Shown here: one piece after another, positions 1 to 40,599 of the stretch
Position numbering within the stretch: the stretch's first letter is position 1
Layout: each line of letters opens with the position of its first letter
Assembly: GCA_907165135.1 (NCBI GenBank)
Contig: OU015568.1
Span: forward strand, 496,001-560,000
Direction of reading: 5' to 3'
Source of the DNA: Oikopleura dioica
Taxonomy: Eukaryota; Animalia; Chordata
Length of the DNA stretch: 64,000 bases
The notes under the pieces: model-generated
What the model saw: the letters and a program-made list of their open reading frames with translations, nothing else
Database searches by the model: none
Told to the model about the DNA's origin: nothing
Position numbers and translations under genes: made by a program

Positions 1-2710
1 CTAAATTAGCGAGCTCGGAGCTTAAAAGACCAACAATGCCAAATGCTACCTGCTTAGTGATATAGATTTGCATCGGCCAAAGAGAACACTGACTCGAATT
101 TGGAAATTTGAGGATATATTTAAAAATCGATCATTTTAAAAATTTCTACCTGCTAACATGAAGCTGCTTAACAGAACGAGACGCCAATTGTTGTCAAAAA
201 AGTTGTCGCGCCTAAAAGCACTTATTTTCAAAAGCAAAATAAGCCTTATGGTTTTTCAAATCAGGTTTTTAAGCGCCATTTTTAAGCTGCATTTGCAGAA
301 CGCCGTTCCCCTGCAGAACGTGGCCGCCCTACACCCCTGGGTGGTCGACTCACCTTCCATCCCTCATCAGTTTATAATTGCTTCATTATATTTTTAGTAA
401 ATGTCGTGATCATTCTCATTACGCCTCTATTTTTGTTGGAGCTGGTTCACCGTCGTCAACTCAAATTTCAGCCAATTTCACCCCCTCTCATTTTGCTGCT
501 ATTTCTGTTACCGACCATAATACTGCCTGGAATTAATAAACAATCGAAACCAATTATTTGACCGCGCTGCGTATGTAAGGGCGATTTCAAATTTTGTTGA
601 CGGGCATTAATATTTTTTCGTTTTTTGCCGATATGAAAGAGCACAAAAAATGAGGCAGACTAGTGTATAAATTATCATCGTGGCTTTGTAATTACCTTAA
701 TATCTTTAGGAGAAAGTCCAAAAATATTAAAACTTATCGAGTCGCGCTCTTATCGAGCTCTTATCGAGCTCATTCAATTTTCAGTTATAATAGAGCATGA
801 TTTTACCGTTTCCCTGGCGTTTGCTTTAGCTACCAAAATTTGCTTTGTTAGAATCACTGATATAAGAAATATTTGATCTTTATATTATATAAATTATATG
901 ATTTATGGCTAACTTTATAATAATACCAATTCGAATGAATGACTTAATTTTTTATTACCAACCATAGTTGTAGAAAGAACATTTATATTGAGCTTGGATT
1001 GAAAACAAGTTATGGTTTTTCAAAAATCATATCAAGAAAGTTTTCCTAGTAAAAATAAAAATAAGGCTACTTCCGCATTTCCCAAAATCCTGGATTCTAA
1101 ATCCTGGATTTCTTAAAATCCTGAATTTGAAATGCTTGAATCTGAAATTTCGTCATAAATACTTGGCTGCAGGTTGATATTGTTATAATTGTCGATATGA
1201 GATTTGTTAATCTGATTCTTTTTTTTTCAAATGGTTTATCTTGGATTTGAAATTTTTGTTTTTAATGCTTTATTGCTGCTCTGTCTTGCCTTGATTTTAA
1301 ATTAGCCTTTCTCATAATTGATTTTCTCTCTATATGATTAATTGGTTTTGGTGCTTCTCGGTGCTTCACTTTATGTAGATATTAAGGCTTGCATCGCGAT
1401 AATAATGTGTATATTAACTGGAATTCGAGTTTTATCTTGTTCCATTCAAATATGTTGCATGGTGCATATATTATTTATTTCTAAATAGAACAAATGAATC
1501 ATTCTCTGATTTTCTTACGGTTTAGTATTCATCATCCTTTTATCGTTGCACATAATAATTTTTTTTTAATTTTATCTGATAAGTTATTATCGATGAATTC
1601 TTTATAATTGTGCCGGTCCTTATTCTCTTCAAAAATGTTGGCGCTCAATTGTCGGTTATATCCTCTCTTCGATCTTCTTGGGGTCTGTGGGTTGGGTATT
1701 TATTTAAAATTTTTTTCTTGTAGTATTCTTTCTCATTATATTGATTATATGCGTTTTCCAGTTCTACTTTTGGCATATTTTGTTTCTAGTTGATTATTAG
1801 GTACCCTTGTCGAATGGTACTCATTTTCGTAGCTTACTTGACTCATTCTTCCAAATGACTGAATTGTATTTTTTGAAAACCTAAAACATCGTCCTTCTTA
1901 CCATTCGTACTGGGTCCGTGATACTTCTAGTCACTCTTGGGATCTCTTCAGTGACAATCAGTGGTGCCGGATAATGCTGCGGTAATGGGCTCATTGGCGT
2001 TATTGGCACAATGATCGGTGGGTTTCGGTCTTCCTAAAAAAAAATATTGATTCTCCTCCTTTTTTTTTACCTTTTTTTCTTCTCGGAGTTCTTTGACTTT
2101 GTTTCTGAACTCTTTCCTTTTTCGCCCAAAACGGCATGTGCATATCGTTGCTTAACGGACTCTGAGTAAGATATCTTGATTTGTCTTCATTAGTTGATTT
2201 GTTTTTTTGCATTTTTTACGAGGTGGTGTTTCGATTGTTTTTCATATCTTATTCGTCTTACCTGTTAGGACTACTCCAAGAAGGAACGCCCCTGCCACGA
2301 TTAAAGCGAAGTAACCTGGAGTGCTTACGATGTTGCTCACTTAATTTGTTTTTTTTTTCTAACATGTCAATCTTACATGTGTTGTCATGCAATGAGCTAA
2401 GGCTGAAAGCATCGTTATTGCAGTGAATGGTGATTGCTTTTTCCAATTCGCTCTTTCCGTTGAAGTTGCTCATCTCAGTGGCCGTGGCTAAGTTTTCATT
2501 ATCATTTTGTTTTTTTTTCTGACCACATGGATTTTAAATTATTAGTGGTTTAATTAAAGTCTGTTTCTTGCCTATTATTTTCTTCCAAAACAATATTCTC
2601 TTTCGTTGTATTCAATACGGAGATTTTTAAAACTCGGATTCGGGATATCTTGTTTCAACTCCGGAAAGTCTAGAAACAGTGTCGTTCGTATTTCTCCTCG
2701 AGCGTCCTGA

Positions 2711-2732
2711 TGACGTCATTAGGAGCGGAAAT
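2711..2732. promoter_or_regulatory. CRE palindrome (TGACGTCA) plus GCGGAAAT motif in a probable divergent promoter
   Basis: TGACGTCA at 2711-2718 between a minus-strand ORF starting about 2473 and the chromodomain ATG at 2957. Confidence 0.3.
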
Positions 2733-2956
2733 GTGTTTTTTTTTTGTTTGCGTCAAAGTTTTTGCTGTGGCGAAAAACATGTTATTTTTTTATCTTGTAA
2801 AATTTTTTGCTTTGAACTTGAATTGTTTTTCGCCGTGGTTTTTTTAAGTTGATTGTCCCTCTGCCTTCGTGTTTTTTCCTGATAGTTGGCGATATATCAT
2901 TAGCTGTGATACTTAGTTTCCTTCACAATTGCTCACAAAGTTCATTTTTCAGCGCT

Positions 2957-3667
2957 ATGTCGCAGAGTAAAATAACTCCCTCTTCCCAAGAAATTCCCCC
3001 TGATGTTTCTTCTCAAGTTGCTGATGGAGGTGAGGTTATTGCTGACGCAAGAACTTTCAGGAGTATGAATATCAATCGTACTAACGAATATACTCATGGA
3101 TTGGGCGGCCGCTTCAAGGATCGTCGAATAATTGACGGAGTTCTTCATTACAAAGTAATCTCCTTCCTACTTCTTTCTTTTAATTTGTATCTTAGTTCAG
3201 CGTTAATAATGGCCCGGAATTATTCTATCCGCTCTATGCTTTTACTGATGAGGAGATTTTCGAAGCTCGAAAGTACGATGCGTCTTTTCGGAAACCTCGT
3301 TCTCTTTTACCTGGGACTCTTCATCTTGACAAGAAGGAACCCAAAGTATGTTTTCTCGCTCTTTAGTTAAATAATTTGTAGTTTTCCGAGCATTCGCAGT
3401 GGCTTGTTTCAAAGATTATTGGACATAAAACCGAAAACGGCGTTCGTAAATACAAGGTTGGTTATTTTGCGTATCTACAATATCGCCACCATAATTTTAC
3501 TCGTCTGCAATCAATTTCGTTATAGTTTTTCTGTCTTAATAATTCTTTTATAGGTTCATTGGGAAGGATTTGATGAATCTGAATCTACATGGGAGCCTGA
3601 AGAATCTCTCACTCAGTTTGGCTCCGTTGTTTTGACACCGCTTCAAGAATATCTCTCGCGTCTTTGA
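2957..3667 (+). CDS. Chromodomain protein (4 exons; possible degenerate N-terminal second chromodomain)
   Basis: Spliced GT-AG exons give QWLVSKIIGHKTENGVRKYK|VHWEGFDESESTWEPEESL, a canonical chromodomain with W/W/F cage residues. Upstream FKDRRIIDGVLHYK is chromo-like. Confidence 0.85.
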
Positions 3668-6267: not shown

Positions 6268-7010
6268 TTAGAAAAGTCTCTGTCGGCATTCTGTTTGCGG
6301 CGATGCATATTTTGTGATTACTTTCGCTTTTATATTTATATCACCGTTCCTGGACATGGGTTTCGGCGGTTGCTCTGCTCCACCCATCTTGTCAAACATT
6401 CTTTGTGGAAGAGATGATGGCAGTTTTTCCCTCTCGCCATTATCTCAGTGAAGTTCTGTAAGCAGATTGAACATTCCTTCTCGAGCTCTTCTTGTGTTTC
6501 AATAAACACGTCGACTAATCGGCCTTCCTGTGTATGTCGCCTAGTGCCATGAACAGCACGTAGCCTTTGCTCGTTGTACAGCGCTCTCCATGTTTCTTGA
6601 TTGTTCATTAACGGTTTTCTTTCTAGTTTTTCCGGTTTGAACAATTCCTATGTGGCGGTGGTAAAAATTGATGATCTCTCGGCTATAAGTCGATGAATAT
6701 AATCCTTAGTACTTATCTTTTCTCTTATATCCCTAAATGTATTCCTCCATGCGTGGATCATTTGGGTCCATAGTATCATCTCTTCGTAGAAACTCATCGA
6801 GAGTCACTTGATTCATTTGGGCATCGTGCATCAATTGATCTTTGATTTACGCTATTAATCTTCGTTAGTTTTTAGTCTACCTTGGCCCCGATCTTGTTGA
6901 GCATTGCTGTTCCTCCCTCGAGTATCATGTCCGATTCTTCCATATTCCTTTTTTTTTTAATTAATTTTTTTCCTAGGTTATTTTGTACCTGTTCATTATT
7001 TCTCTCCATT
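6268..7010 (-). CDS. RING-H2 E3 ligase with a candidate PIP box (5' end approximate)
   Basis: CSICLQNF...CHHLFHKECLTRW...CP, completed to CPECRQRLF* by a GA-AG intron at 6291-6349. An upstream exon carries QVTLDEFL (6787-6810). Confidence 0.8.
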
Positions 7011-7501: not shown

Positions 7502-9514
7502 TTATCGGATTCGGTGTCTTAGCATCAAAATGTGTTTTGTTTCGCGAGTGAAATATAGTGGGAGGTTTTGATTTAGTGTCATTGCTTTTTTTCTTGTTTC
7601 CCCCAAAATCTACTCATGTTAAAATATTCGTTGGGGCTCTTGATTTCAACCGTCTTTTTGTCCATTTGATCACTCTGGTGTGTTCTTTGGAAAAATTCGC
7701 TACAGGCTTTTTGTGGTCGACCTTTCTTCGCATGTGTCATTATGTCTTCTATGTCTTTTCTTTGATTTTACGTGCCTTCTCTGTTTGGGTACTTTTGAAA
7801 ATCCCTTCCTTCAGATATTCCCCAACTTTCCAGTTTGGTTTTGAGATCTTCGTTGTTTGTAAATGGGCACAAATGATATTCTTCCTTCGATTTTGCAATC
7901 TTCGTTTTCGTTTCGCATGTGTAGGATACTAAACTCATTACTTTTTGTTGTAATTTGCTTCATAATTACTTATTGGGCTCTTTTTCCCCACTTGTCCATA
8001 TGCATATTTAACGTGATACTCGTGTTCCGCTGCTGGATTTTGGTAGTTATGCATTTTTGTTGTTGTTAGCTTCAGGGCATCCTCCATTGTCATTCCTGCA
8101 TTTCGTAGGAATGACCATAAATGCAGCCGTCCCTAATAACCTTTCTTATCGTTTTTCAACTCATTGTTTCCCAGTCAGCTACTTTTTTTTTTATATATTA
8201 GTACAGTACCATGTATTTTAATTTTCCATCCTTATCTAGTCCGTTGAACAAATTTCTTAAACAAGGTGGCATTGATGTTCTCTTCATGAATTCCAAATTG
8301 TCGTATGTGAGACCGTTCGTTTTTGCTTGAATTTCTTCCGGCTTTACATCTTCCATTATCGCTTTCAGGATAGGCACTTAATTATCGCGTTTGTGCTGTA
8401 TCTAATTACTTCGATAGTCACTAGCAAGAATTTCGGATTCTGTTTTGTGCGTCATATCGCTAAATTTGTTTTACCTAGTCTTTCTGTTTCATTGTACATC
8501 ATTGCGTCGTGCTTAACTGCGAATCCGTCTAACCAGCGATGGTTTTCTTTGTTCATAATACTTTTAACGTATTCTATCAACTCTTGTTCGGCAATATAGG
8601 CTTAAAAATTTATTACTTATACGTTCTGATGTTTACCTTTGCCTTGATGTAGAAAACAATCCCTCTGCGAGACAACAGTCTCTACTTCTGTCCACGGAAT
8701 GCGATACCATGTTTTAACGGTCACTGTTCTCATATTGGCACATTCTTTCAGTTTCTTGGCGAGGTCCGTTGTCAATTCCTCAGCCTTTACCTCGTCGATT
8801 CCTTTCGTTGCGTTCTTAATGAAATTCAATGATGGTTTTTTTTTGTAAATTACCTGCAGGAATTTTTTTTTTGCTTTTTCGCTCAGCAACGAATATCTAT
8901 ACTCGAACAATCTGAGCTCATTTTCTATAAACCAAGCCCGACGCACTGGATCTCGACACACTGCTATCTTTAAGGTCCAATGCGATACGTTATCATTGTT
9001 CCTTTCGTCTAGTGTGGGGATCAATCGCTCCAGTCCGATATATTTCACAAGTTTGTCGCGTAAAAATGATTCTTCTAACATCAGGGGTCGGTATCTGCGC
9101 AAGAAAGTCTCATTTTCGAGATTTCATCTTCGAGCTGGCTTTCCCCGCGCATCAATGCTTCCCTCAGCTTTGGTCATTTCTGGTTCGGCCCTTATCCGCC
9201 AACTCAGTTCTGTAGTCGCCGACCCCAGCCTAATAGCCGTTTTCTTATACTGGTCACAGTCTTTTGTTTGTGTCTATCTTTTCTATTCTCAATACTTGAG
9301 TGGGCATACTCATTATACCTTCGATGATACAAAGAGCCAAGTATCTTGCTCTTGTAATGGCTATTAATTTATCAAGATCGAAGTCAGTGTCCATTGGAAG
9401 TTTTGAATATATTCGGACTGGGAATCTTAACAATTCATCGTCGAGTATTTCCTCGTCCTTGCATTCGACTAGGCCAATTCCTCGATGTTCCCTTTTGTAT
9501 ATTTTCGGTGGCAT
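7502..9514 (-). CDS. PRIM2: DNA primase large subunit (p58/PriL), multi-exon (3' end approximate)
   Basis: DNVSHWTLKIAVC...AWFIENELRLFEYRY; SMPPCLRNL...LKYM|GRLHLWSFLRNAG; HEYHVKYAYG; SYTC...YHLCPF; QKACSEFF...SPNEYF. All four Fe-S Cys-equivalent motifs are present in order. Confidence 0.92.
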
Positions 9515-9740: not shown

Positions 9741-10097
9741 CTAGATTCGACGTACACAGACCGGGCAGTAGTTACGTTCCATAAGCCATCGTTCTTTATT
9801 GGAAATCACAGTTTGCTTTTCTATATTTTATTGTTCATTTCCCGTTCCGATGCAGGCTCCATGATAGCGATGTTCACACATTTGTAATTGCACTCCGTCA
9901 GAATTAATTTCCTCTAGACAGATGGGGCAAAGGCTTCCTTGACTCTCTTGTTCAGTCCTTTCATATCTTTCCATTGTTCTCATTCTCTGTTCTACGCGAA
10001 CGTCAACCTGTATGCCGATGGTGTTCGTACTGTTGCCACTCTCGTTTTGTCTTTTATTGGCATTTTCTAGTGGTTGTCTATATTGATCAAAAAGCAA
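9741..10097 (-). CDS. RING-H2 E3 ligase (5' exons probably extend to about 10470)
   Basis: CPICLEE...CEHRYHGACI joined to ERWLMERNYCPVC by a GA-AG intron at 9794-9847. Confidence 0.85.
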
Positions 10098-10559: not shown

Positions 10560-11480
10560 AATTCATTCTTTTTATCGTTCTTCTCTCCGTTCTTTCGTTT
10601 CTCCTTCTATTTATTTTTTGATTCTGTCTATCTTTTTTCCTACCTCTTGTTCCTCCTTCTTATCAATTTTCCCCGCCATGAATGTTCCGTCCATCATCAA
10701 TACTTTCTGTTCACCTTCCAGCCCCGTTGTTATGAACGTTCCATCCATCAGCATATTTCCTTTCCTGATTTCTTCCCCTTCGTTGTCAGTCTTGTTCACA
10801 GCGGCGGTAAGATCGATGTTTCCCTTCGTCATTCAAAAATTATGGAATGATTTTTATCTACCTTCAATGTTCCTCCTAGGTGGAAGGTTCCATCCATCAT
10901 GAAGTTATCTGGTGTCTGTCTGAGCGTTGCTTCGCCGTTGGACAACGCCTGGAGGACTTTGAGGTCCGCGGTAGTCTTATCATTTTGTATTTTATTCATA
11001 GGTCTGCGTACCTCGATGGGGATGCTGCGATTTCCGGCTGTTGGAACGTTCTTTTTGTTCATGCTGTCAATAATCGTTTCTTATGTGTATTTTAAGTTAT
11101 TAAATATGTTGTGGGTTATTATTAATACCGGCGATGTGAACAGTGCAGAGGTGGGTTCCAAGTGGTTTTGTTCCTTCTTTATCATCGGAACTCTGCTGCA
11201 ACGCTTTCTCCTCCTTCAAGGTTTCGAACTTCTTTTGAAGCATGGTGACATCTCCTTCGCCTTGAGTTTTGACTACCATCTCCAAGGGTGCCTTTATTTT
11301 TTAATCATTTATTTTTTTTAGGTTTATACCTCCACTCTTATGGCTTTGTTGATGTCCGCTTCATTGCATTCCTTGAGGTCTCCTTTTTGCGTGAACATAG
11401 CATTGTATAATATTTGGGTCTATTTACCTGCGATGTGGATGGTGGCGAGGATGGAGCTGGGTGTCACCATTCCATTTTCT
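10560..11480 (-). CDS. Hypothetical protein with repeated MDGTF and T(I/V)HIA motifs
   Basis: Exons contain MMDGTF, LMDGTF, MMDGTF, LATIHIA and LCTVHIA, separated by short GT-AG introns. Confidence 0.5.
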
Positions 11481-12642: not shown

Positions 12643-12999
12643 TTAGAAATCTGCCCGACACACGGCGCAGTTGTTGTTTTCTTTCAGCCACTGTCGAATA
12701 CAATTTCGATGGAAGATATGCGTGCAATTTGCCATTTGGCATCTCGTCGCGGTGAGCGATTCCAAGCAAATAGGACACAGTTCCTCGGTCGCCTCCTCAT
12801 CTGGTATGGCGATTAGTCGGTCGTTTATGTATTCTTCTCGCTGTATCTCGTCCCTATAAACGGTGGTCTTTTGTTTTATTATTAGCTTACAGGAAAATGT
12901 TTTCTGGGTCAACTTCGTCGGCGAAGTTGTAAACGGCATTCCACTGGTCCTCATTAATGAAGTAGTTGTTGATAAGATTAATTCTGAGTGAAGGGTCAA
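12643..12999 (-). CDS. RING-H2 E3 ligase, C-terminal part (5' exons probably to about 13420)
   Basis: CPICLESL...CTHIFHRNCIRQWLKENNNCAVCR, a complete C3H2C3 pattern. Confidence 0.9.
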   Translation of the reverse strand: MTLHSELILSTTTSLMRTSGMPFTTSPTKLTQKTFSCKLIIKQKTTVYRDEIQREEYINDRLIAIPDEEATEELCPICLESLTATRCQMANCTHIFHRNCIRQWLKENNNCAVCRADF

Positions 13000-13515: not shown

Positions 13516-14576
13516 TTATATATTATCTAAATGGTAGGCGACTGTTCCCATTCCTTCCACGCTATACATGAGAACAAGTTTGTCTTCCGCTGCGTTGATT
13601 GTCACATGATTCGGAATCTGCTCTGCGCTCGCGATGAACACCATTCGCCTTCATTCATTAGTTTTGCACACACCGTGTGATACCTGTTAGAATAGTTGTA
13701 TCGAAGTGTTCGATCGTTACTTGCCCGATTTGTTATAGCTGGAGCAGGGGTCTAAATTCGCAGTGCGAACTCGCTTTTTTGCGAAGCCGCTTAATTTAAA
13801 AAAAAATGGTTCGCTTTCGCACTAGGATTTCGGCTGATATTTTGACCCCTGACTGGTGTGTTCAGGAATGTGTAGTTTGTGCTTGAAAATTTAACTACTC
13901 TCGTTAGCTGATCGATTGTCAATTCTATCTTTCCATAGACATTTTCGAATCTATCGCATATCGTCAAAAGGGTTATTCCTTCTAACTCGACGGTGCAGCT
14001 AGCAATAGTTAGTTTATGAAGATTAAAATTTATTACTTGTACTCGGGTTCGGGCACGGTTTCTGGAATGTGTTGCAATTCGTACGACAGATGAATTCGCC
14101 GCTTCGATTTAAAGCCCAGAGCTAACTTCATCCATTCGCTTGGCTCCTGGATTCTTGGGTTGTTCATCTTAATAAACAGTCTAAAGCGGCTAGTATGCAT
14201 CAATTACCCTGGCAATGTATTCCGTCTGTAAAAATGGTCCATCTTGGTCGTAATCTATGCTGATAAGCACATCGTGGTAAATGTCCCCCCCGGATAGAAC
14301 TTGTTTTAACATGTTCGTTGATACTAAATAAAATTTTTTAATGTCTACCCAATAGCATCTCTCACCTGCCCATTTTTTTTCTATTTGGCATTCGTATTCG
14401 TGAAATGCTTCTCGATTGATTGTCAGTATTGTCATCTTGTTTCCTGATCGCGTTCCGATTCTGTGAATATGCAATTCTTTGGAAGTTACCATCAAGTTGC
14501 AGTAGCCAAAATCCGACTCGATGGCAAAGGCCATTTTTCTCAGCCTATTCGCGTCAATAAGGTATGCCTTGAACAT
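13516..14576 (-). CDS. PCNA: Highly divergent full-length PCNA paralogue (PCNA-a)
   Basis: N-terminus MFKAYL...LTINREAFHEYEC; middle VPEPEY|NCTVELEG...ICDRF...VKFSS; C-terminus HVTINAAEDKLVLMYSVEGMGTVAYHL. All collinear with PCNA. Confidence 0.75.
13745..13851. mobile_element. 107-bp mini-MITE (CAGGGGTC TIR) inside PCNA-a coding sequence
   Basis: CAGGGGTCTAAA ... TTTTGACCCCTG. Degenerate 7-bp TSD (minus strand CACCAGT / CTCCAGC). Confidence 0.6.
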
Positions 14577-25394: not shown

Positions 25395-25529
25395 CGTGCT
25401 TAAAATCTTCGGTTATACGATAAAAATATGGATGAGTAATATGTGCAGTGTACATCATCAAGATATAATATAAGCGACACAATGCTAAATAAAGAAATAA
25501 AAGACAAGTCAGCAGAACAAGAAACAAAA

Positions 25530-28500
25530 CTATTTCTTATTGCGAGCGGATCGTCGAAGGGGGATGATGGCTTCGCCACAAGGCGGATCAGCAGGGGATG
25601 GACACTGAATATTCGAAAAAAAAAATTATAGAAAGAAATACCTCGGGAGAGATGGGGGAGGTACCAGAAGGAGTGTTCGAAGCAACAGCCAACTTCGACC
25701 GTTCAGACGAACGAGAAGACGGGTTAGATCGCGATGATTTAGTAGGCTAAATATATTTATAAAAGATAAAAAAATAAAAATACCTGAGCAGGTGGAACGG
25801 ACGAAGAATCTTTTTTCTTGGCAACGATTTTAGATTTAGTTTTGGAAACTTTGGAGGATTTTTTAGGATTCTTTTTTGGGGGAGCTTTCGATTTGGAACG
25901 CGGCTGTCGAGAAGAAGACCGTCGTTCAGCAGCAATCAGACCCAATTCTAATTCTTCATCGGCGGTGAGCTGCGACACAGGGATACCGGCAGCTTCTTCC
26001 TCGGCACGCGTCTTGTTAAGAGCTGCAACTTCGGCGAGCTGATGACGAAGCAGAAGCTCAGGTTTCATAGGGCGAGTAGACTTGCGAGTAAATACACCCA
26101 TCATAGACGTGACAGATATATTTTTCGCCGCCTCCGACGCAATTTGAGCGCTCCTCATAAACTGATGTTCATCCTCCGTCCGTGACGGCTTCTTAGAAGA
26201 AGTCTTCGTTACCTTTGAAATACAGATACAATGAAAAAGATTGTAAAAACCTTGGGTTGAGAGGAATTGGCGCTAGAGGACAAAGGACGCTCATCAACTG
26301 AAGAAATAACACGTGGGTTCTTCGTAGTTACATGCTGAAATTTATGACATTAAAAATTATTTCCAAATTATTACCGGAGGACGAGGCCGACCATTTTCAT
26401 CCAAGCGAACAGATTTGTACTTGCGTTTAAGAGGGGACAAAACACGATTAATGGACCCGGGGGAGGGCTGCTCAGAATGACCCAAGGATTGAGACGCAGA
26501 AGAAGAGAGGCAGGCCTAAAGAATTAATAAATAAACAAAACAACTCAACTACTTGAGAAAAAGACGTAGAGGGGCGTGATGAATTCGTCGTGTCAGTTTT
26601 TTTCAAAGAAGATCGACCACGAGCGGGAACAGGTAGAGACGAAGGCGAATCATTTTCAGAAGCCGTACGAGAAAGGGCTTCGACCATAAATCGAGCGGGA
26701 CCAACTCGACCATCAGCCGATGCAGAAGGAACCTGTGAGAAAGCAACATCTGGTAAATTAGACATGGACGAAGGGCCAGGAAGAGAAGGAGGGTTGGAAT
26801 CGGGAGCTGCTTGATGTTGAGCGGATGACGCATCTAATATACAGAAAAAAAAATATTAATAATTAATATACCAAGATGGAGATCATCCATTGTGTCACTA
26901 AGTTGTGATAAAGACTGCTGCACTGGATTAGAAGTTGAAACAATGGCAGGAGCGGAAGTTGCCACGGGCATCGATGGAGAAACAGAAACAGGTGTCATGT
27001 TTGAGCCGTGACAGCTCTGACGAATAGGAGACTGCGGAGTAGTAATTGCGGCGCCCTCCGCGAAAACAGCGCCCCCGCTTGAGGGCATCGGCTCATTATT
27101 GGAACGTGGCTCGGGCGTAACAGAGGCGGCCGCAGCAACAGGACAGAGAGGGGGAGAAATATGACAATGGTCAGAATGTAGTCCGGAAGAATCACGGGGA
27201 GAGATACGACCGTGTGAAGTCACAGACTCAGCAACACGCTGAGGCGGTGGAGGCGAGATATTGCATACAGATGAAGATGGAATAATACTGGCGCCAATAT
27301 TACCGGAAGCGTTAGTGGCAAGATCAATCTCAGAAACCGAGTGCCGAAACTGGGAGTCCAAATTGTTGGACGCGGTTGGAATTGGAATCTGCTGAAGATT
27401 CCAACCATCAGCATCATCGCGGTAATGATCTTCGGTGAGAAGCGCATCGGCGTCAGTTTCTTCAGCCACGGGAGCGACAAAAGTAGCATTCGAGTCAGTC
27501 GGAATACGAATATCCTCATCTGGCAACGCCCCGTCAACCGCGTTATCCTCCATCTCATCATCAGAATAAATAGGATCATCGTTAGAAACAGCTGCAACAA
27601 GACCAGCGTCGAGACCGTGACTGTCAGCCATCAACTGAGCGAGTCGTTCACGACGAAGACGGCGCGCGGCGATAGCGGCGAACCGTTTGCATTCTCGCAT
27701 CTATAAATTAATGGGAAAGTAAGTAAAACAAAATACCTTGTACGTATTCAGCATAAATTCCATAATATCGAGAAAATGCTCGGTCGGAAGCGGCTCGTGT
27801 TCAGGAACGATAGGGATTTTGTCACAGAGATCAATAACCTGCCGCATGTGAAGAACGTTCGCTTCGTGATGTTCAGGATCGCACCAAGGCTCAACGAACT
27901 TGCCTTCCATATATTCACGGCCATTATCATTCATGAAGTTGTTATAAATCTCCACATCTTTCCGGAAAGAGAGTTGCCGCTACGAAATAATGAAAGAAGA
28001 AAAATATAAAATTACCCGTCCATGGCGCTTGACGTACGTCCAATTTAAGGCAGAGTGAATAGACTCTGCCGGATTGGTATGAAGGGACAATGGTATTCCA
28101 CTGCATTTTTGGAGCTGAATCAGTGGCCACAAGTGCCAACGCTTACCCCACTTATGCCTAAGCACCCGCATCGCGAAGTTCTTGATAAATCTCGCCAGTC
28201 TACGTCCAAATAGAGGAGTACGAGCGACAACCGAGTAGAAGTAGAGGAGAAGTCCATTAGTGAGATCTTCACGCATTAATTGCTAAAAAAATTAAAAAGA
28301 AAACAAAGGGAAAACTTACGGCATTCTTAAGCACCCAGCAGACGAGACGAATAGGAGCAGCGGCCTTATTTCCAAACATATTCTTAAGATTCCGGAAGAG
28401 GTTCCGTTCGCAGTGGATCGAACAAAGGAAGGTAGAGACTTGAACATTCTTCGATGAGAGAGCGGACTCGAAGCTAAATATAAATAAGAAGAAATAAACG

Positions 28501-30983
28501 AAAATTATATACCCGGAATAGAGCGCTCCCTCTGCATCACATTGCAAGAGACAGTGGGTGCAGAGAAGCCGCATCTCAGGTTTGATGAGATCCCAAAAGA
28601 CGGAAAATGCATGCTCATAATCCAAAGAATTCTTGGTGAGCATATAGATACCGCCAATATGCAAAAGCTTCTCGCCATGAATATCATCAACGCATGACAT
28701 CAGGATCGTGACGCATTGATAGAAGCTTCCGGCTACGAAGAAAGTACCATCTAACATGATACGATGGAACGTTCTCTTCGGCAATCGCTCGATAAGGGCC
28801 CAATCCAAAACTAAAAACAAAATTCGCTCCGCTCATATTATATTCGATAGCAAAACTTACGGATAAGGCATCTATTGTCCTGGTGAGCGGCAAACCGCTT
28901 ACCGGAAAGATTCATTCCAGCCTGATAAGGCAAGTTACAAAGCCGGCGAGAGAGAAGGGGGCATCGTTCATCCTGTTCGTCATCGGCATCTTCCAACATC
29001 TTTTTGAAGCGGAATTTTTTTTGGGCGAGCTGGGTAGCATAGAATGCCTTCGCTCTCTGACGTTTGTATCCTGGATATTCGCGCTGAACTTTTTCAAACA
29101 ACGTTTTCACGACGACAGACGTAGTGTTAGCTCCATTACGTTGAACTTCAGCCTAAACGACAATTAACAACTACAAACAATATAAAAAATTACATCGATC
29201 AGGGTACGATAGGTAAGCTCAGCAGCCTCTTGCGGTGAAAGACCTCCACATGTGTGTAATGAACTCTTACGACTAGAAGCACCAAAATCCGGTGACACGG
29301 ACGATGGATGAAAAAAGACATGGCGAAAAAAGTCCGAGCTAAACACTGGATTCACATCGTAAGATCCAGGACTCGTTTCAACCAAGAGACCCGGAAGCCC
29401 GTAGAAAGTCTCACGGCCGGCATTACAATTTTTACATCTGAAGTAAAACACGGAAAGCCGACCACAGCGCCTTAAAGAAAAAAAAATAATTAAAGAATAT
29501 AAAAACACATTTACGTTAAGTAGCAATTTCCCTTTCTCATATCGAAAAGCACCAACTGTTGACCCGGATTGTTTCCATTTGGTACGTTTTGAACGGCGAC
29601 GGATCCGGCAGGAGTAGATGAATCGTCAGGAGCGCCAGAAGAGGTTGAATCAGATGAAACATCGTTTTGGCTAAGAGATGACCCAGATGGTGTCACGCCA
29701 TAGCATAGAATTGCCGAAGGATTTCCTGCCGAAGTCACGTACGAATGGCGAACAGAGCGTGTGTCGGAGGGAGCAATCACAACAGAATTGGTAACATGAG
29801 AAAATTCATCACGAACATGCTCAATGTGGGCGGCAGGATCATCAAATGCATCAGCGTTGAAGGAACAGGGAATATGATCAGGATTATCGCGGAAAAAAGT
29901 CAAGCCACGATGATCACCATGATCGACAGGAGTGACACCATCTTCAGTGGGATTTGCCGGGTCAGCCGCACCGCCGATGATGGACGCAACAGCAGGATTC
30001 TGCAATGCACCTTGCCGGTATTGGGCATACCGTTCCTCGAGGGAAGCCTGCAGTCGGTCAAGACCGCGAGTAAAATTTTCCCCGCGAGGCGCCTCGAAAA
30101 ATCGCTGAAGATCAGCGTCAGAGATGTCGGGATATTGGTGCGACGGAAGTGAACTCGTGGTGGAAGGTTGATTATCGGGCGCGGCGGGGGGTAAGTGGTG
30201 ATGCGCTTTACGACCCCTGTGAGCATAGACCTCGGGATCAGGCTGAATAATAGCGGGAACGGAGCTCATCTTCTTCCGACGTCGATAACCGGGTTGACGA
30301 GAAGGCGCCGTCGTTGAACGAGAGGGTCGGTCATCATCATCAGAATCAAAGGTAACGCGAATTTGTCGATTGCGAGGATTTGCACGAGAAACACAGGCTT
30401 GGGGGCGACGGGAATCATTTTCACGCAATACACGATCAACAAGGACATCGGCTCTGTTGAGTTGGTTATCAATGGGGCGCGAAGAGTTGCATTTAGTATT
30501 GCGGTTCGGCCGATTCGTTCGACAAGAAGACTAAATATAAAATGAAAGAAATAAAAAATAATAATACCGTAAGAGACGTTGGTCGACGAGGGGGGGAAGG
30601 TGAAGCTGAGGAATCGGATAGACGAAATGATCCCCTGGATTTCGACAAGTTCTTAGTATTTGACGCAGGACCCGCCATTGACTTAGACTTCGCGATCGAG
30701 GCCTGTCGACCCCTGAGGGAAGATGTCAGAGAAGATTGAGGTTGATTATCAGGAGGCTGAGCAGACGACATAGAAGTGCAATTATCCGTAGGATCAGAAT
30801 TATTGCCTTTTAATCGGCGAGCCTCAGGGTGGATCGATTGATCATCAATCTAATTAAATTAAAAATGGATATGAACACTTATTAAACCTCGGCTTGAGCT
30901 TGAAGATCAGCAAAGCGCTCATCATCACTGGAGAAACAATTGGCAGCAGCAGATGGATTTTTTGCGGACGACCCATGACTCAT
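25530..30983 (-). CDS. Large multi-exon Mutator/MULE DDE transposase
   Basis: C2HC finger (FRCKNC...HTC, about 29.2-29.45 kb); MLDGTF (D at 28749-51); CDAEGAL (D at 28536-38); FLCSIHC (CxxH); TNPAESIHSAL (E at 28064-66). Long Ser/Pro-rich N- and C-terminal extensions. Confidence 0.88.
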
Positions 30984-31093
30984 TTATCCCTCTAAATGTA
31001 AATGGAAATCAAGGAGGAGAGTACATGTAAAAAACAACATGGATGTAGGAACAAAAGGAGGATTGGTACTGGTAAGAAGAGGGAAAATAGAAA

Positions 31094-32787
31094 TTATATA
31101 AGACGGCGGGACAAGGCGCCAGAACCGTGGCGAAGGAGAGCAGCATATGAGAGGCTGTCACGCAGAGGAGCAAAATCGGTAAAAGTTTCACGAACCCTCG
31201 TAATCATTTCGTCGATATAGCGCTCAATTTGAAAGGTGGTCGGACGGATGGCTTTGTAATCGCGCTAAATATTAACACAGAGCGTTAATAAAAGAACCTA
31301 CCAATAAATGGCGAAAAAAATAATCAGCGGCATAGGCAGAGTTTAAGCCAGCACAAGTATGAACAACTTGACGATGAAGAGTGGGATGGTGCTCGGAAGG
31401 AAATGATGTTCGAGCAAAGAACTCACGAACACATGACGGACGTAAACGAATAGACGATCCAGGAGTATATGGGTGGACGAGGATGTCAGTAGATCCAACG
31501 AAAAACTCACTAGCATGACAGCAGGGCTCACGGCAAACAAAACGAAACACACATTGACCAGGATCATCGCTAAATTGGACAAAATTGATTTGTTATCGAG
31601 GAGAATTACCTATGGCGGAAGAGTGTAGCGCTAAATCGATAAAGAAAAACCGATCGGGAGAAAAATCAGAAGACGCATCTTCAGGAACATATGATAATAA
31701 AACGGCAGGAAGTCCAGAGCCAACCACATGCGGGAAGACAATTTCTTTCCTCGCACAAGATGGAATAAAAATTGGGTCAATCACATTAGCCATCGAATCT
31801 AAAAAAGTGAAACACAAAATTTAATTTTTAATGAAAGTGACTATAAATCGGTGCTACGAATTTGCCTGGCAGGAAAAATAGTCAAAATAATTTAGATCAT
31901 GTGAAACAGTAGCGCTACGAGATAAAAAATAGGATTAATCAGAAGGGGGCGAAATTATTATATGAAAACAAGGAAGAGTACGAAAGGATAAGCTTAATTG
32001 AGAAATAAAAAAAAAAGGAAATAAAAAAATTAACCATATTAACATACAAAAACAAGGGACAAAAAGACGAGAAACAACGGTAAATGTCAACGAAGTCTCG
32101 AAAGAACTAAATCAATGTAATGATCATTGTGACGTACAGGAGCGTAAGACGGATATTCGACGCGAACCTGCTCAATAGTCGTGTGAATATACTCCCGAAT
32201 AAGATGGATTCGCCGGCGAGAGAAAGGAGCGGACTAAAAAAACTAAAAAATATATATAAAAAAGAAAGTACCCGAAGTTTATGCTGGAGCGATAATTCGC
32301 CAGCGAAATTCTCTCCAAGGGGCCAACAAGAATGTGAAGACTGGTGATATTGGTGGGCATCATTAGGATTAAAGAGCGACACGAGTGAAAAGAAATCGCT
32401 CGAAGCCGATTCTTCAAGAAACATCCGGTCATCATTAGAACCAGACAACATAGATGAGGGGCCAGAGAAAAACTCCTCGCCAGTGCAGTGCCTACGGGCG
32501 CATGTGAATCGAAAGACAGCGCGACCATCCCTAATAAATATATTATGAAAAATAGTAAAATAAATTTACCTAATAGAAGAGGAGCGCAGTCTAAGCGGAA
32601 AAAGAAGATCGGACGATTCATTCGTATGGATAGGATCCGACGTAAACGAAGGAACGGCGTAAGACATGACGACTCCAGGACGCCGAAAATGGGGGAAACC
32701 CGTCCGAACATAACGATCAGCAGAAAACGGGATGAAGTGGACTGGCGGAGTTAATTCTTCACTAGAAATAACGGAATCAGACGACAT
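31094..32787 (-). CDS. Transposase-related DNA-binding protein with two WRKY/GCM-like C2HC fingers and no catalytic domain
   Basis: FRFTCARRHC..EEFFSG...HSC and FRFVCREPCC..SEFFVG...HTC match the finger of the downstream transposase. Stop at about 31094 precedes a new ATG at 30983. Confidence 0.65.
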
Positions 32788-33368
32788 CTAAAAGCAAAAA
32801 TTGGGACTCGAATTTAGCTGAAAACAAATTTAATTTAAACAGAAAAATTTCAAGGGAAGAATAATAAGGGGATATAGTTAAAACAAAATACACATTGGAT
32901 CATAATTATCAATTGTAAGGGAGTACTGTCGACAAGTTAATGGAAGATTCAAAATAATAAATGAATAGGTAATGCGATTAGAAATATATTTTCTAGACTT
33001 GGGATCGACGCAGGGAGAAAGCGATAGAGCGTGGATAATGATAAATTATGAAATAGTATCTCGAAGTAAAGAATTCTCTTGAAAGTAATTGTAAAAAATC
33101 AAAATGACAAATGAGTCCAGGGAAAGCCAGGTACAAATCAGGTGGTACTCGGGCCAATTAGAAATTAAAGATCGGAAGATAGATAAGGCTGACGCTCGGA
33201 CAAATTTTGTTGAGCGGCAAGTCGCGGGCACCGCCCGCTCAGACACAAGTCGGAGAGACAACCACGCTCAGCCGATCAGCAAAAGCGACGAAACACTCCA
33301 AAGTCTTATCAGGAAATGAGATTATATACAAACAAAGAAAAAAAAATAGTTACACCGGTAATAGCAAT

Positions 33369-34030
33369 ATGACCACCGCAAATCTCGAAAAGCCTCTCGA
33401 AATGAACTTGAACTACCAAAACAACAGATTGGAAGCAGAACGTCGAGACTTGGAAAGTCACGGCAACATGGTAGCTGCAATGGTAATTATGAATATATTG
33501 GCAAAAATACAGATATATTAAGTTCACAATACTGATAGACAGAAATGACCCGTACAAATGGAACATCCGGTTCCTTGGACCACTGGGCACACCATACCAG
33601 GTAAGAAAAAGACGAACTACTAAAATATGAAAAGGGAGGAATCTTCATTCTGCAAATACAAATGACGGAAGATTATCCACAAGGAGATTTCACTGCAAAA
33701 TTTCTCACGCCGATTTACCATCCATTGGTCAGTCCAGAAACAGGAGAACTACTCATTCCTGATGTTCCAAATAGGGTACTAAGTACGCCTGGATCGACAA
33801 GAAAATGGACCTGGACAAGGCCACTCGGGACAATCAGTGAGCTATGCATGGATTTCGCAGCTACAATGTATGATCTAAAGCCATACATTCCGCGTGAACC
33901 AACAAATCCGCCAGGTAAAGCGAAGCCGATAACTATATAACCGTGAGAAGCATTAGAATACAAGAACAATACAGAAGAATTCAATCGAAAGGCGAAAACA
34001 TGGACGATGCGACATGCAATGAGCCAGTAA
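33369..34030 (+). CDS. Ubiquitin-conjugating enzyme variant (UBE2D-like fold lacking the catalytic Cys)
   Basis: RLEAERRDL; DPYKWNIRFLGPLGTPYQ|GGIFILQIQMTEDYP..FLTPIYHPLVSPETGELLI; EEFNRKAKTWTMRHA. HPN is HPL and the C of ICL is replaced by L. Confidence 0.85.
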
Positions 34031-37533: not shown

Positions 37534-38079
37534 GGTACAAAAAAAGGAAATAATAATAAAACAAATTAGACCAACGCCAAGATGGAACAAACTGTACATA
37601 CGCCACAGAAAACCCACGCCACGGAAAATGAAGACCTCAAACGTACTGAAAAACTTGCCAACCATATTCACTGTATCATTGCCACAGGTTCAAACACCAT
37701 GTCTTCCAGTATAAACATGCAACGAAATAGACGATAAAAACGGGACATTCCCTTAATAACACTATTCCATTATTATGCAACGATCAATAGGATTGAGCCA
37801 CGTTCTGATTAAAATCAATACAAATTAAAATTAAGGAATGTCTTCGGATTCAAGTATTATATAGGATAAAAGATCAATCACACTAAGAAATGAGTGAGTA
37901 CTTGGGTTGACTATAAAAAAATGAATTATAATTATTCAATATCAGGGTTAAGACTCATATAATTATACAAATTAACGTTCAGATCAGTTCAGGGTTTTAT
38001 TCGGTTATCTCCAGAAAAGGAACTTAAAAGAACATTAAACTATTAAATCATCGACTATTTATTCAGCACGGCGCAGGAG

Positions 38080-38917
38080 TGTATTCGAAAAAGTAGATAT
38101 TTAGACACAGGCGACCAAGACTCGTAGAAAATTGTCCTAAAGATACGATAAGATAAAATCATTGGAACTACCAAGATCCATTGCCACCCATCTTCATAAA
38201 CTTCTAGACAAGACAGTCCCAACTTCTGCTACAAACATGATTGATAGCATATGCTTGTCTTAAGTTCGGATGTCATCACCTTTGCAGCAATTATTGATCG
38301 TATAAAGTCCTAGAAAAGGAAAGAACGTATCCGATTGACTCGGTGCAAACGCATTCGGCTCGGTAGCATAGCTCGCACATAGCTAGTCCCATTGTCCTTC
38401 GCCAGATTCTGAGGATCAGTAAATAAGATGAGAAAAATAATACCTTGCATTCCATAGCAGTAGAAATAAGCGTAAAATCCGATCGGGCTTATTTCCAGGA
38501 CATGCGCCGAATTATCAATGACAAGCTTTCGATTGGTCATGCAGTTGGCGTTCCTGAATAGAATTTTTAGTGAGAAAGCAGACCCGACCCAAATTCACAA
38601 ACAAAATAGAGCCGAATCGTCGCCTACGACTCCATGTCGGCCAAAGTTGCCGAGAATATTTTAGCAATAAACTTAAGTAGCAATCCAAAATACTAACTTA
38701 AAAACTCAATAATAGCAAAAACGGACTCAATGGAGGCATCAAAAGATATGTCCGTACCCTCGGTTGTCTCCGATCGTGTATCAGGGTTGTGGTTGAACGC
38801 CCTCATCATCGTCCGAAAGAGCACGAGCAATGCAAGAATCGAACTCACGCCGACCAGAAACGCCCTATCAAGAGGCACACCACTAAGCCAACCGGACACG
38901 AAGGAGCTAAAAAACAA
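38080..38917 (-). CDS. Hypothetical multi-exon membrane-anchored protein
   Basis: AFLVGVSSILALLVLF hydrophobic stretch followed by short exons separated by GT-AG introns. Confidence 0.35.
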
Positions 38918-40599
38918 AAACGAAGTAACGTAGCAAGGAAAACTACCAACGCAGTGGAGGCGCGTGTAGGCGGCTAGATAACCCAGCTCGGAAAATCAAA
39001 TGGGACCAGAAAATTATTGAGAGGAGTTAATCGCCTATTCTGCCAAATAAGCGAGTTAATAATAAACAATAAATATCTTCTGCCAAAGATATAATATTGT
39101 ACACCAAAGAAAACCCTCCCAATAATTTTCGAGTCACCCATAATGTCGAAAATAGATTATGCAAAATTTAAGAAATAAAAGAAAAAAAAATTGTGAAAAC
39201 GCTAAGAGGAAGAAATGAAAATACCCCCATCCCACCCCCTACCCGGAACTAAAACATGGGTACAAAAAATATCGAGAAAAAATGCGAAAATTTGGCGAAA
39301 AAATTATAGAAGGGCGCGCTCCGCGCGCAATATAGAGAATAACAGAAGAAATAGTGGTAGGGTAAAGTAGTAGAAAGTATAGTTAGTAAGAATAGTAAAA
39401 ATAGTAATTTATTTTAGGTATATAAAATTATTTTTTTGCGAGTTTTAAATTTGCGAGTTTTTCGCAAAATGACCCCTTTTTTAAAAAAAAAATTTCGCAA
39501 AAATAAAATTTCGCATTCTAACTTTTTATTATTTTAAAAATTTGTTAAATCTGAGATTTATTAAAAAACAATTTTCTCACAAAAAAAATTTCGCAAAATG
39601 TTTTTTTGGCAAATCAAAAATGGTCTCAAAATGTGGTGTTTTTTAAAATTTCCATTTTTCGAAAGAAAAAGCTGACTGGGGTCCTTAAAGCCGAAAATCG
39701 GTTTTGCAACTTCCGAATCGAAAATTTATCTCTACAATCAGTTTTTGAATTCTTGCAACTTATATTTCAGACCCTGACTGAGGTTTGCTACACAAGTTGT
39801 CGATTCCAGTCTTGAACATCTTTCTTAAAGCCATCATTGTTTGATTGCTTGTCTGTCCATGTTAGATTTGCTAAGCGATTCGAGCTTTTTTATATTTATC
39901 GCATATCTACTCGTCCAAATTTTTTCTCGAAATTTCAGCTGCAGCAAACTCCGAAGAGAGGGATTATCATTCGAGCCTGTGACTCGAGCTATCCAATATC
40001 TCTTGAATCTGGGCTAGTGGTTAGGGTTAGGGACGTGGAACTTAAGGGGGGTGGGGGTCCAGGGGGAGAGGCCTTAGGTTGGGGGCGTAGCCACCTGGGT
40101 AAGGTTAAGGGTTAGGGGCAGCTCGAATGATAACCGGTGTTTCCTTACACCGACCATATCCTTACACCGACCGAATCCTTACACCGACCAAATACTAACA
40201 CCGACCATTTTCAGAATTTGGTTGGTGTAAGGAATTGGTCGGTATAAGAGTTTGGTCGGTGTAAGGAAATTTGCAACGAAATATTTTCTAAGACATAAAA
40301 TGAGACAGTGGTCACAAAAAACTTTTAAGTTGACCCCCCACTGAGCGAAAAATTTCGGAAAATTTTTTACAGTATTTGGAAGGCTTTATTTTCGATTTTT
40401 ACTTTATGATTGAATGGTTGAGGAAAGGGTGAAAATTTTTTTAATATTTTATTATTTTTTCTACAGGAACCTTCTTAATTTTTATATTTTGTAAATTTTG
40501 TAAAAGAAATTTTATGTAGTATATAAATAGTTTTGTAAAATGCGGTAGCGGCAAGGCAAATGCGAATGTACAGTAGTTTTTTACGGGCTTTTTTCCAAT

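What the first reader, a model, noticed from the sequence alone, without database searches (positions are those of the whole stretch)
400..39400. Giant Mutator-transposase element carrying its own primase heterodimer and PCNA family: candidate new class of replicative mobile element
Seen: one roughly 39-kb block holds an intact-looking MULE transposase (D-D-E, CxxH), PRIM1, PRIM2, four PCNAs, four RINGs, a dead E2 and a chromodomain. The transposase is co-oriented with and tightly spaced against the PCNA array, with no TIR/TSD of its own. Known: self-synthesising or virus-fused elements use other recombinases (Polintons: retroviral-type integrase plus pPolB; Teratorn: piggyBac plus herpesvirus; Starships: tyrosine recombinase). 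I do not know of a MULE coupled to a eukaryotic-type primase/PCNA set. Inference: an element that replicates extrachromosomally, or an endogenous nuclear DNA virus that uses a Mutator transposase as its integrase.
Basis: partly seen in the sequence, partly recalled or inferred. Interest (0 to 1): 0.95.

Follow-up and report, generated by a model that had tools for sequence, protein, structure and literature searches.

The report
Transposase-led clamp and primase gene cassette
A transposase-like gene heads a tightly packed row of extra sliding-clamp (PCNA) and DNA-primase genes, and the tunicate Oikopleura dioica keeps the same row in the same order at two loci, so it is a real, old, co-inherited unit with no described precedent found; whether it still moves is unproven.

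Summary
Most of the observed genes are real. On the minus strand lie a long DDE transposase-like gene (24803-32787), three PCNA paralogues, a RING-like gene, an intact-looking PRIM1, RING-H2 genes and an intact-looking PRIM2. A chromodomain exon pair and a weak E2-like gene lie on the plus strand at the edges. The "fourth PCNA" is not supported.

The key new result is that the transposase's only relatives among 1.8 billion representative proteins are a few Oikopleura dioica proteins. At two O. dioica loci (chr2, chr1) the homologue is followed, in the same order, by PCNAs, a RING-like gene and PRIM1. Four intron positions are shared. O. dioica also has a separate PCNA, so the cassette PCNAs are extra copies there.

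I found no terminal inverted repeats, target-site duplications, near-identical copies, polymerase, helicase, capsid or viral relatives.

Best reading: an ancient appendicularian cassette, probably a resident (domesticated or nearly immobile) descendant of a giant Mutator-superfamily element, arranged like an operon. It couples a DNA-cutting enzyme to its own priming and clamp proteins. An element that is still mobile is not excluded.

The parts
24803..32787 (-). DDE transposase-like gene, about 8 kb, probably one gene as in O. dioica P0001 (1684 aa). It has three repeated N-terminal Cys/His modules (about 32272-32530, 31272-31550, 29194-29470), a DDE core (27737-28810), a low-complexity middle and a C-terminal 'X' domain (24803-25394).
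   Evidence: Splice model. 417-aa alignment to P0001, E 9e-93. Catalytic columns. Fold. X domain conserved in L001, L002 and L004. No in-frame stop or frameshift in the aligned exons (0 breaks). The 5' end and the middle part of the model are uncertain.
23786..24744 (-). PCNA-A, the most canonical-like paralogue; 259-aa model, 5 exons.
   Evidence: Pfam PCNA_N 2.8e-20 and PCNA_C. PDB PCNA hits, 59 bits for the first exon. Model. Positional homologue at L001 16839-17930.
22704..23643 (-). PCNA-B, very divergent; 265-aa model.
   Evidence: Pfam PCNA_C 1.7e-4. HMM. Positional homologue at L001 18038-19065, only 19% identical.
21596..22521 (-). PCNA-C.
   Evidence: Pfam PCNA_C 8.6e-17. N-terminal exon HMM 4e-16. 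42% identity to the L001 PCNA-C N-terminus.
21198..21512 (-). Small Cys-rich RING-like / zinc-ribbon gene.
   Evidence: Weak Pfam hit only. Positional homologues at L001 20348- and L002 22325-22552.
18371..19971 (-). Primase small subunit (PRIM1). All homologous exons are open; the 5' end is unresolved.
   Evidence: PF01896. PDB hit. DxD, zinc knuckle, SGxRGxH and PFSxH motifs kept in the window, L001 and L002. 45-57% identity to L001 and 36-48% to L002.
17106..18051 (-). Gene D, unassigned.
   Evidence: Weak positional homology to L001 24191-24454. No Pfam hit. hhalign against PCNA negative.
13516..14576 (-).
   Evidence: No Pfam hit. hhalign negative. AF2 pLDDT 34. A similar-looking gene, judged by eye, at L002 27032-28260.
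12643..12999 (-). RING-H2 ligase gene.
   Evidence: zf-RING_2 8e-12. Homologue in the same relative place at L002 29450-29713.
10614..11285 (-). Gene with three M[LM]DGTFxxxG repeats that mimic the first catalytic block of the DDE core.
   Evidence: Found in the window only; no Pfam hit.
9828..10097 (-). RING finger exon.
   Evidence: zf-RING_11 6.8e-7.
7579..9514 (-). Primase large subunit (PRIM2). Exons are open and the four Fe-S cysteines are present.
   Evidence: PDB hit 2.6e-8. PF04104 on two exons. Sequence read. Not seen within the available flanks of L001 or L002.
6336..6644 (-). RING-H2 gene.
   Evidence: zf-RING_2 2.7e-10.
3382..3664 (+). Chromodomain exon pair on the opposite strand; not part of the conserved cassette.
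   Evidence: PF00385, 27.3 bits.
33207..33940 (+). E2-like gene with no Cys at the expected catalytic position, divergent from the transposase gene; not conserved next to the O. dioica cassettes.
   Evidence: UQ_con E 0.0012, below cutoff. PDB E 0.035, including the inactive E2 variant AKTIP. No tblastx match in L001 or L002.

Best explanation
What it is. The core of the block (about 12.6-32.8 kb, minus strand, possibly extending to PRIM2 at 7.6 kb) is one ancient, co-inherited gene cassette of appendicularian tunicates.

Gene order. The first gene encodes a protein of roughly 1,700-2,000 residues. It has repeated Cys/His modules, a DDE (RNase-H-fold) transposase core of the hAT/P/Mutator-IS256 kind with every catalytic position kept, and a family-specific C-terminal domain. 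Downstream, at gaps of 58-182 nt, come three divergent PCNA paralogues and a RING-like gene. Each of these has a pyrimidine-tract-plus-AG acceptor just before its ATG. Further downstream on the same strand lie a complete primase small subunit, two unassigned genes, RING-H2 ligases and a complete primase large subunit.

Status. In O. dioica the cassette PCNAs are extra to a separate PCNA, so at least that part of the set is accessory rather than the host's core replication machinery. I think it most likely a resident, vertically inherited descendant of a giant Mutator-superfamily element. It would now be domesticated or nearly immobile, and transcribed like an Oikopleura operon.

Proposed mechanism. 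The transposase-derived enzyme recognises and cuts or nicks particular DNA. The cassette's own primase and a (hetero)trimeric PCNA then recruit host polymerases to copy DNA from those sites. The RING ligases modify the clamp.

Shown: gene identities, order, intactness, cross-species and paralogous conservation, shared introns, and the lack of termini or recent copies.

Inferred: polycistronic expression, the heterotrimer, the coupling of cutting to priming, and present immobility.
For: - Only 7 relatives among 1.84e9 representatives, the best of them O. dioica proteins.
- L001 (chr2): the DDE gene is followed directly by three PCNAs, a RING-like gene, PRIM1 and gene D, in the window's order. 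L002 (chr1): DDE, X domain, RING-like, PRIM1, an unassigned gene, RING-H2.
- The window's DDE core is 36% identical to P0001 but 29% to P0002, and P0001 against P0002 is 29%. The two cassette types therefore predate the species split.
- At least 4 shared intron positions.
- Catalytic residues kept in the DDE core and in PRIM1; PRIM2 keeps its Fe-S cysteines.
- DDE fold.
- Short gaps and acceptor-like sites before the ATGs.
- No TIR, TSD or repeats. L014 and L015 are haplotigs, not extra copies.
- The primers for a separate Od-PCNA encode peptides absent from all cassette loci.
- Microsynteny and operons are generally not preserved in Oikopleura (PMC11067885), so the kept order implies constraint on the unit.
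- No viral relatives.
Against: - Immobility is argued from absence. Only +/-10 kb of each O. dioica locus and a single window of the source species were available, so termini further out and other copies would be missed.
- The flanking genes differ at all three loci, as expected for insertions (though also for a scrambled genome).
- Solo DDE copies (L003, L004 and metagenome contigs L005-L008) show that the family spread at some time.
- Retained catalytic residues fit an active transposase as well as a domesticated one.
- Pfam does not recognise a MULE domain.
- I could not establish whether canonical PRIM1 and PRIM2 exist elsewhere.
- There are no expression data.
- The splice models come from a home-made predictor.
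Confidence: 0.5

Rival explanations
1. A still-mobile giant Mutator-superfamily element that carries its own primase and clamp. This is a self-priming, replicative transposon.
For: - An intact DDE gene always sits at the 5' end of the cassette.
- The unit is kept whole in two paralogous copies and across species, although Oikopleura scrambles even operons.
- Flanking genes differ at each locus.
- Solo family members exist elsewhere.
- The PCNAs are accessory in O. dioica.
Against: - No TIRs, TSDs or repeats bound the block here or within the O. dioica flanks.
- No near-identical copies exist: copies are 27-36% identical and the similar Bergen contigs are haplotigs.
- Only 7 relatives among 1.84e9 proteins.
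- Intron positions are conserved.
- No DNA polymerase or helicase was found (and earlier scans).
Confidence: 0.22
2. A host set of specialised replication paralogues, for example for endocycling epithelium or the germline, in line with the cell-cycle gene expansions known in O. dioica. The DDE gene would be only an operon passenger with no functional link.
For: - Operon-like spacing.
- Oikopleura operons mix loosely related housekeeping, cell-cycle and germline genes.
- The PCNAs are extra copies.
- Cell-cycle paralogue expansions in O. dioica are known to me from the literature; I did not test this here.
Against: A mere passenger should not stay at the head of the array in both ancient paralogous cassettes and across species when operon membership is otherwise rapidly reshuffled. 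The DDE catalytic residues and the C-terminal domain that abuts PCNA-A are conserved.
Confidence: 0.15
3. An endogenous nuclear DNA virus that uses a Mutator-type transposase as its integrase.
For: A multi-gene replication module is kept as a unit, with RING ligase genes nearby; a weak E2-like gene lies beside this window's copy only.
Against: - No capsid, packaging ATPase, polymerase or helicase domain in the ORFs scanned.
- No relatives of the DDE, PRIM1, PRIM2 or PCNA-A genes in IMG/VR.
- The primase is the two-subunit cellular type, and PCNA-A scores best against animal PCNAs among solved structures.
- The genes carry many spliceosomal introns.
Confidence: 0.04
4. A chance neighbourhood: an ordinary transposon inserted beside ordinary host replication genes.
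For: The window is TE-rich on its right side.
Against: The same order is found at two O. dioica loci. The DDE gene has no TIR or TSD of its own. Its stop codon lies 58 nt from the PCNA-A ATG.
Confidence: 0.02

Closest known systems
Mutator / MULE transposons (eukaryotes) and IS256 (prokaryotes)
   Same: DDE core with the D, D, CxxH and E blocks. N-terminal Cys/His DNA-binding-like modules. Fold matches include ISCth4, an IS256-family transposase. UniProt labels two O. dioica relatives 'MULE transposase domain-containing'.
   Different: No Pfam MULE, Mutator or SWIM match at threshold. No TIRs and no 9-11-bp TSD. An 8-kb multi-intron gene with an unknown C-terminal domain. Followed by a conserved array of replication genes.
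Self-synthesising or virus-fused giant elements (Polintons/Mavericks, casposons, Teratorn)
   Same: A recombinase gene kept together with DNA-replication genes as one unit.
   Different: Those elements carry a DNA polymerase (protein-primed PolB or herpesvirus-type), have defined termini and often carry capsid genes. Here there is a cellular-type primase heterodimer plus PCNAs, with no polymerase, no termini and no capsid.
Domesticated transposases (MULE-derived FHY3/FAR1 and MUSTANG; piggyBac-derived PiggyMac; RAG1)
   Same: Single-copy, intron-bearing, intact, conserved across species, and lacking TIRs and TSDs. Some of them also retain their catalytic residues.
   Different: None of these is known to me to be linked in cis to its own clamp and primase genes. 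Orthology here is shown only through cassette-internal synteny, not through independent flanking genes.
Pack-MULEs and other cargo-carrying transposons (e.g. Starships)
   Same: A transposase lineage associated with host-derived genes.
   Different: Pack-MULE cargo consists of gene fragments between TIRs. Here the cargo is a set of complete, conserved, catalytically intact genes, and no TIRs are seen.
Heterotrimeric sliding clamps (crenarchaeal PCNA1-2-3; the 9-1-1 complex)
   Same: Three distinct PCNA-fold paralogues are kept side by side, each with its positional counterpart in O. dioica.
   Different: Heterotrimer formation is untested. The paralogues evolve very fast (19-42% identity between species).
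Oikopleura operons resolved by SL trans-splicing
   Same: Head-to-tail genes with gaps well under 500 nt and acceptor-like sites before the ATGs.
   Different: Ordinary Oikopleura operons are not conserved even between cryptic O. dioica species, whereas this array is conserved far deeper.

Membership tests
Mutator/MULE superfamily transposase | RNase-H-fold DDE catalytic core with an insertion domain and a C/DxxH block between the second D and the E | tested here: met
   Conserved D, D, CxxH and E columns. AF2 core pLDDT 81-95. Foldseek matches: Hermes, P-element transposase, integrase cores and ISCth4, an IS256-family transposase. This fold is shared with hAT and P, so it does not single out Mutator.
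Mutator/MULE superfamily transposase | Significant match to the curated MULE (PF10551) or Mutator (PF20700) profiles | tested here: not met
   No match in the window exons, P0001, P0002, P0003, P0009 or P0010, even at E<=10. The only hit is PF20700, E 0.0047 and 16 bits (cutoff 26.5), in P0006. The MULE assignment therefore rests on motif shape (my knowledge of the family) and on UniProt's names.
Mutator/MULE transposon (as a mobile element) | Terminal inverted repeats and a 9-11-bp target-site duplication | tested here: not met
   No candidate in window 1-40200. In L001-L004 there are only small dispersed hairpin repeats. Ends beyond the fetched flanks could not be examined.
Mutator/MULE transposon (as a mobile element) | Multiple similar copies at different sites | tested here: not met
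   Copies are 22-36% identical. The >=90% identical Bergen contigs are haplotigs. The source species itself could not be searched.
Polinton/Maverick-like or virus-derived element | Own DNA polymerase, capsid or packaging genes, and viral relatives | tested here: not met
   No such Pfam domain in about 60 ORFs. IMG/VR scans were negative. Exon-sized queries are insensitive, and no deep structure search of the unassigned ORFs was possible.
Domesticated transposase gene | Intact ORF conserved across species, no TIR or TSD, single copy per lineage, conserved gene structure | tested here: met
Domesticated transposase gene | Orthologous position defined by independent flanking host genes | tested here: inconclusive
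   Only cassette-internal synteny is conserved. The outer flanks differ, which is uninformative in a scrambled genome.
Eukaryotic primase heterodimer (PriS/PriL) | PriS catalytic acidic motifs and zinc knuckle; PriL C-terminal Fe-S domain with four Cys | tested here: met
   PF01896 and PF04104. PDB hits. Motifs read; which residues count as catalytic comes from established knowledge of the family.
PCNA | Two PCNA domains (PCNA_N and PCNA_C) in a protein of about 260 aa | tested here: met
Oikopleura-type operon | Same-strand genes less than 500 nt apart, polycistronic transcript, SL trans-splicing | tested here: inconclusive
   Spacing and acceptor-like sites are met (definition). No transcript data are available and no SL gene was found (Rfam).

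The most novel reading that the evidence does not exclude
Appendicularian genomes harbour a previously unrecognised class of giant element. A Mutator-superfamily DDE transposase moves or copies a unit of 20 kb or more that brings its own cellular-type primase heterodimer and a dedicated heterotrimeric sliding clamp. The unit would replicate by self-priming while borrowing host polymerases. The window and the two O. dioica cassettes would be members of long-lived lineages of this element.
Probability: 0.22. Interest if true: 0.95.

Novelty: new variant of a known kind. Interest (0 to 1): 0.8.

Why it matters
If the cassette works as one unit, it is the first case I know of in which a eukaryotic DDE transposase (or its domesticated descendant) is hard-wired to its own priming and clamp proteins.

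It therefore bears on three questions:
- how transposition or programmed DNA cutting can be coupled to DNA synthesis;
- how self-replicating elements arise from cellular parts;
- what can hold a gene order together in the most scrambled animal genomes known.

It also reveals an unreported family of fast-evolving PCNA and primase paralogues in a chordate model, O. dioica. Expression and chromatin data that may already exist for that species could be examined directly.

Full-text searches of about 8.4 million papers and preprints for Oikopleura with PCNA, primase or Mutator terms found no description of it.

Tried and rejected
- All three word-indexed protein searches were uninformative: the DDE ORF, the PCNA-A exon and P0001, which found only itself. 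The proteins are too divergent for 5-mer seeding, and exon-sized queries fall foul of the length window. As a result I could not look for canonical PRIM1, PRIM2 or PCNA by homology.
- The PCNA question was settled indirectly for O. dioica through published Od-PCNA primers.
- A profile of the DDE family against PDB sequences found nothing.
- JGI metagenomes held no DDE relatives. A PRIM1 scan returned only generic eukaryotic PRIM1 contigs.
- AF2 of the putative fourth PCNA from a single sequence was useless (pLDDT 34). hhalign of genes D and E against the cassette PCNAs was negative.
- Inverted repeats upstream of the L002 gene looked like possible termini, but they are small repeats dispersed through the locus.
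- Rfam and tRNA scans of the window found nothing.
- I first considered that PCNA-A might be the host's only PCNA, which would make the block the core replication operon. The separate Od-PCNA argues against this for O. dioica.
- The source species could not be identified. Its proteins are absent from the databases searched.
- My splice models come from a simple home-made GT-AG predictor. They are reliable only where homology confirms them, and they perform poorly in the A-rich left half.

Full report
**What the window is.**
The sequence is animal DNA at about 39% GC with very short (about 36-50 nt) GT-AG introns. Bacterial-style ORF lists therefore show only exon-sized pieces. I wrote a small GT-AG splice predictor trained on the supported exons. 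I trusted its models only where homology confirmed them.

**Checking the observation.**
All cassette genes lie on the minus strand.
- Pfam and PDB searches confirm a primase small subunit (PF01896).
- They confirm a primase large subunit (PF04104 on two exons).
- They confirm three PCNA genes: A at 23786-24744, B at 22704-23643 and C at 21596-22521.
- They confirm RING fingers at 6336-6644, 9828-10097 and 12643-12999, plus a Cys-rich RING-like gene at 21198-21512.
- A chromodomain is real, but it lies on the plus strand at 3382-3664.
- The E2-like gene (plus strand, 33207-33940) has only sub-threshold support.
- PRIM1 keeps its acidic DxD block, zinc knuckle, SGxRGxH and PFSxH blocks. PRIM2 keeps four cysteines in its C-terminal domain. 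Which blocks matter is established knowledge of these families.
- In the exons that align to homologues I counted no stops or frameshifts in any of these genes.

**The transposase.**
Pfam does not recognise any part of it. The spliced core nevertheless aligns without breaks over 417 residues (36% identity, E 9e-93) to O. dioica protein P0001. The D, D, CxxH and E columns are kept in every family member.

An AF2 model of relative P0010, built with the family alignment, has a confident core (pLDDT 81-95) with RNase-H topology. Its best PDB matches are Hermes (hAT), P-element transposase, retroviral integrase cores and ISCth4 of the IS256 family.

It is therefore a DDE transposase of the hAT/P/Mutator kind. 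The narrower "MULE" label rests on three things:
- the shape of the motifs;
- UniProt's names for two O. dioica relatives;
- one weak PF20700 hit.

The gene is long. Upstream lie two extra copies of the N-terminal Cys/His module (31272-31550 and 32272-32530). Downstream is a conserved C-terminal domain of about 180 aa (24803-25394, motif WPL[ST]SYPF). In P0001 this domain is the true C-terminus, and in the window it ends 58 nt before the PCNA-A start codon.

**The decisive comparison.**
An exhaustive HMMER search of 1.84 billion representatives found only seven relatives, the best being O. dioica proteins. Fetching their loci gave the following picture.
- On chr2 (L001) the homologue is followed directly by three tandem PCNAs, the RING-like gene, PRIM1 and a weak match to gene D, exactly in the window's order.
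- On chr1 (L002) a second, paralogous cassette has the DDE gene, the X domain, the RING-like gene, PRIM1, an unassigned gene and a RING-H2.
- Two further O. dioica loci and some marine metagenome contigs carry solo DDE genes.

The window's copy is closer to the chr2 type (36%) than either is to the chr1 type (29%). The two cassette types are therefore older than the species split. At least four intron positions in the DDE gene coincide between the window and O. dioica.

Plessy et al. 2024 report that O. dioica lineages scramble microsynteny and do not even preserve operons (PMC11067885). An array of eight or so genes kept in order at this depth is therefore exceptional. It rules out a chance neighbourhood or an independent TE insertion.

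**Are these the host's only replication genes?**
I could not search for canonical genes by homology, because all the protein searches failed. However, Kugler et al. 2011 list an O. dioica PCNA gene model and its PCR primers (PMC3034685 supplement). The primers encode SHVSLVQ and LVVAYEI. Neither the primers nor these peptides occur in the cassette loci or in the window.

O. dioica therefore has a PCNA gene separate from the cassette PCNAs. It also has at least two PRIM1 genes, both cassette-linked. Whether a third PRIM1, or a PRIM2 outside the cassettes, exists is unknown.

**Is it mobile or viral?**
- No terminal inverted repeats, target duplications or large repeats bound the block.
- In O. 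dioica only small dispersed hairpin repeats were seen.
- The three Bergen contigs with near-identical protein are 98-99% collinear haplotigs.
- About 60 ORFs scanned in and around the block show no polymerase, helicase, capsid or packaging domain.
- IMG/VR holds no relatives of the DDE, PRIM1, PRIM2 or PCNA-A queries.
- PCNA-A scores best against animal PCNAs among solved structures, and the primase is the cellular two-subunit type.

These are all absences, and they come from limited data: one window, and +/-10 kb of flank at each O. dioica locus.

**How it probably works.**
The gaps between the transposase, PCNA-A, PCNA-B, PCNA-C and the RING-like gene are 58, 142, 182 and 83 nt. Each downstream ATG is preceded within a few to about 30 nt by a pyrimidine tract plus AG. 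This fits an Oikopleura-style polycistron resolved by trans-splicing, which is an inference.

I read the cassette as a resident descendant of a giant Mutator-type element. Its nuclease acts together with its own primase and a dedicated, perhaps heterotrimeric, clamp to start DNA synthesis at the sites it cuts. Host polymerases would do the copying and the RING ligases would tune the clamp. A live self-priming transposon remains a serious rival at about 0.2. A viral origin and a mere operon-passenger model are less likely.

**Unexplained.**
- AT skew flips at about 17 kb although the genes stay on the minus strand. Introns of the DDE and PCNA genes are T-rich on the sense strand (-0.45 and -0.24), whereas PRIM2 introns are A-rich (+0.30). 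A weaker flip of the same sense occurs at PRIM1 in both O. dioica cassettes.
- A gene at 10614-11285 repeats, three times, a motif that mimics the transposase's first catalytic block.

**Slip noted.**
Comparisons to canonical proteins cite PDB and Pfam results only.

Only predicted exons were joined, to test splice models.

Noticed in passing
window 1-40000 (flip near 17000); L001 and L002 near PRIM1: Strong AT-skew reversal that gene orientation does not explain. Sense-strand introns are T-rich in the DDE and PCNA genes but A-rich in PRIM2. A weaker flip of the same sense occurs in both O. dioica cassettes.
   Followed up: partly
window 10614-11285 (-): Predicted gene with three M[LM]DGTFxxxG repeats that mimic the first catalytic-Asp block of the DDE core. 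No Pfam match and no counterpart seen in O. dioica loci.
   Followed up: partly
window 40131-45301: TIR-bounded element. The arms are 169 nt and 88% complementary, built of 17-nt subterminal repeats. A piggyBac-like-looking ORF lies at 44116-44691, with no Pfam hit.
   Followed up: partly
window 54073-61535: Two 300-nt direct repeats, 100% identical, enclose a gag-like ORF (55472-56272) and a double-RING ORF (60335-60862). This is a young LTR-like element or a recent duplication; no reverse transcriptase was seen among the ORFs tested.
   Followed up: partly
window 49549-50265: Array with an 18-nt period, open in both strands and encoding a Val/Asp/Glu-rich repeat.
   Followed up: no
window 47458-47949 (+), 52649-53020 (+), 62838-63929 (-): Ordinary-looking host exons: MFS-like (weak), DNA photolyase-like (PF00875, E 8.5e-5), and a CAP-domain plus thrombospondin type-1 repeat gene.
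   Followed up: partly
L002 19700-20500: Long Ser/Thr/Asn-rich tandem repeat, open in several frames, inside the annotated 2691-aa O. dioica protein between its X domain and the RING-like gene. The annotated protein is probably a fusion of several genes.
   Followed up: no
L001 16839-21024: The O. dioica annotation merges three separate tandem PCNA genes into one 798-aa product.
   Followed up: yes
L005-L008 (marine metagenome contigs): Solo DDE genes 50-62% identical to the O. dioica L003 type, presumably from other appendicularians in plankton samples.
   Followed up: partly
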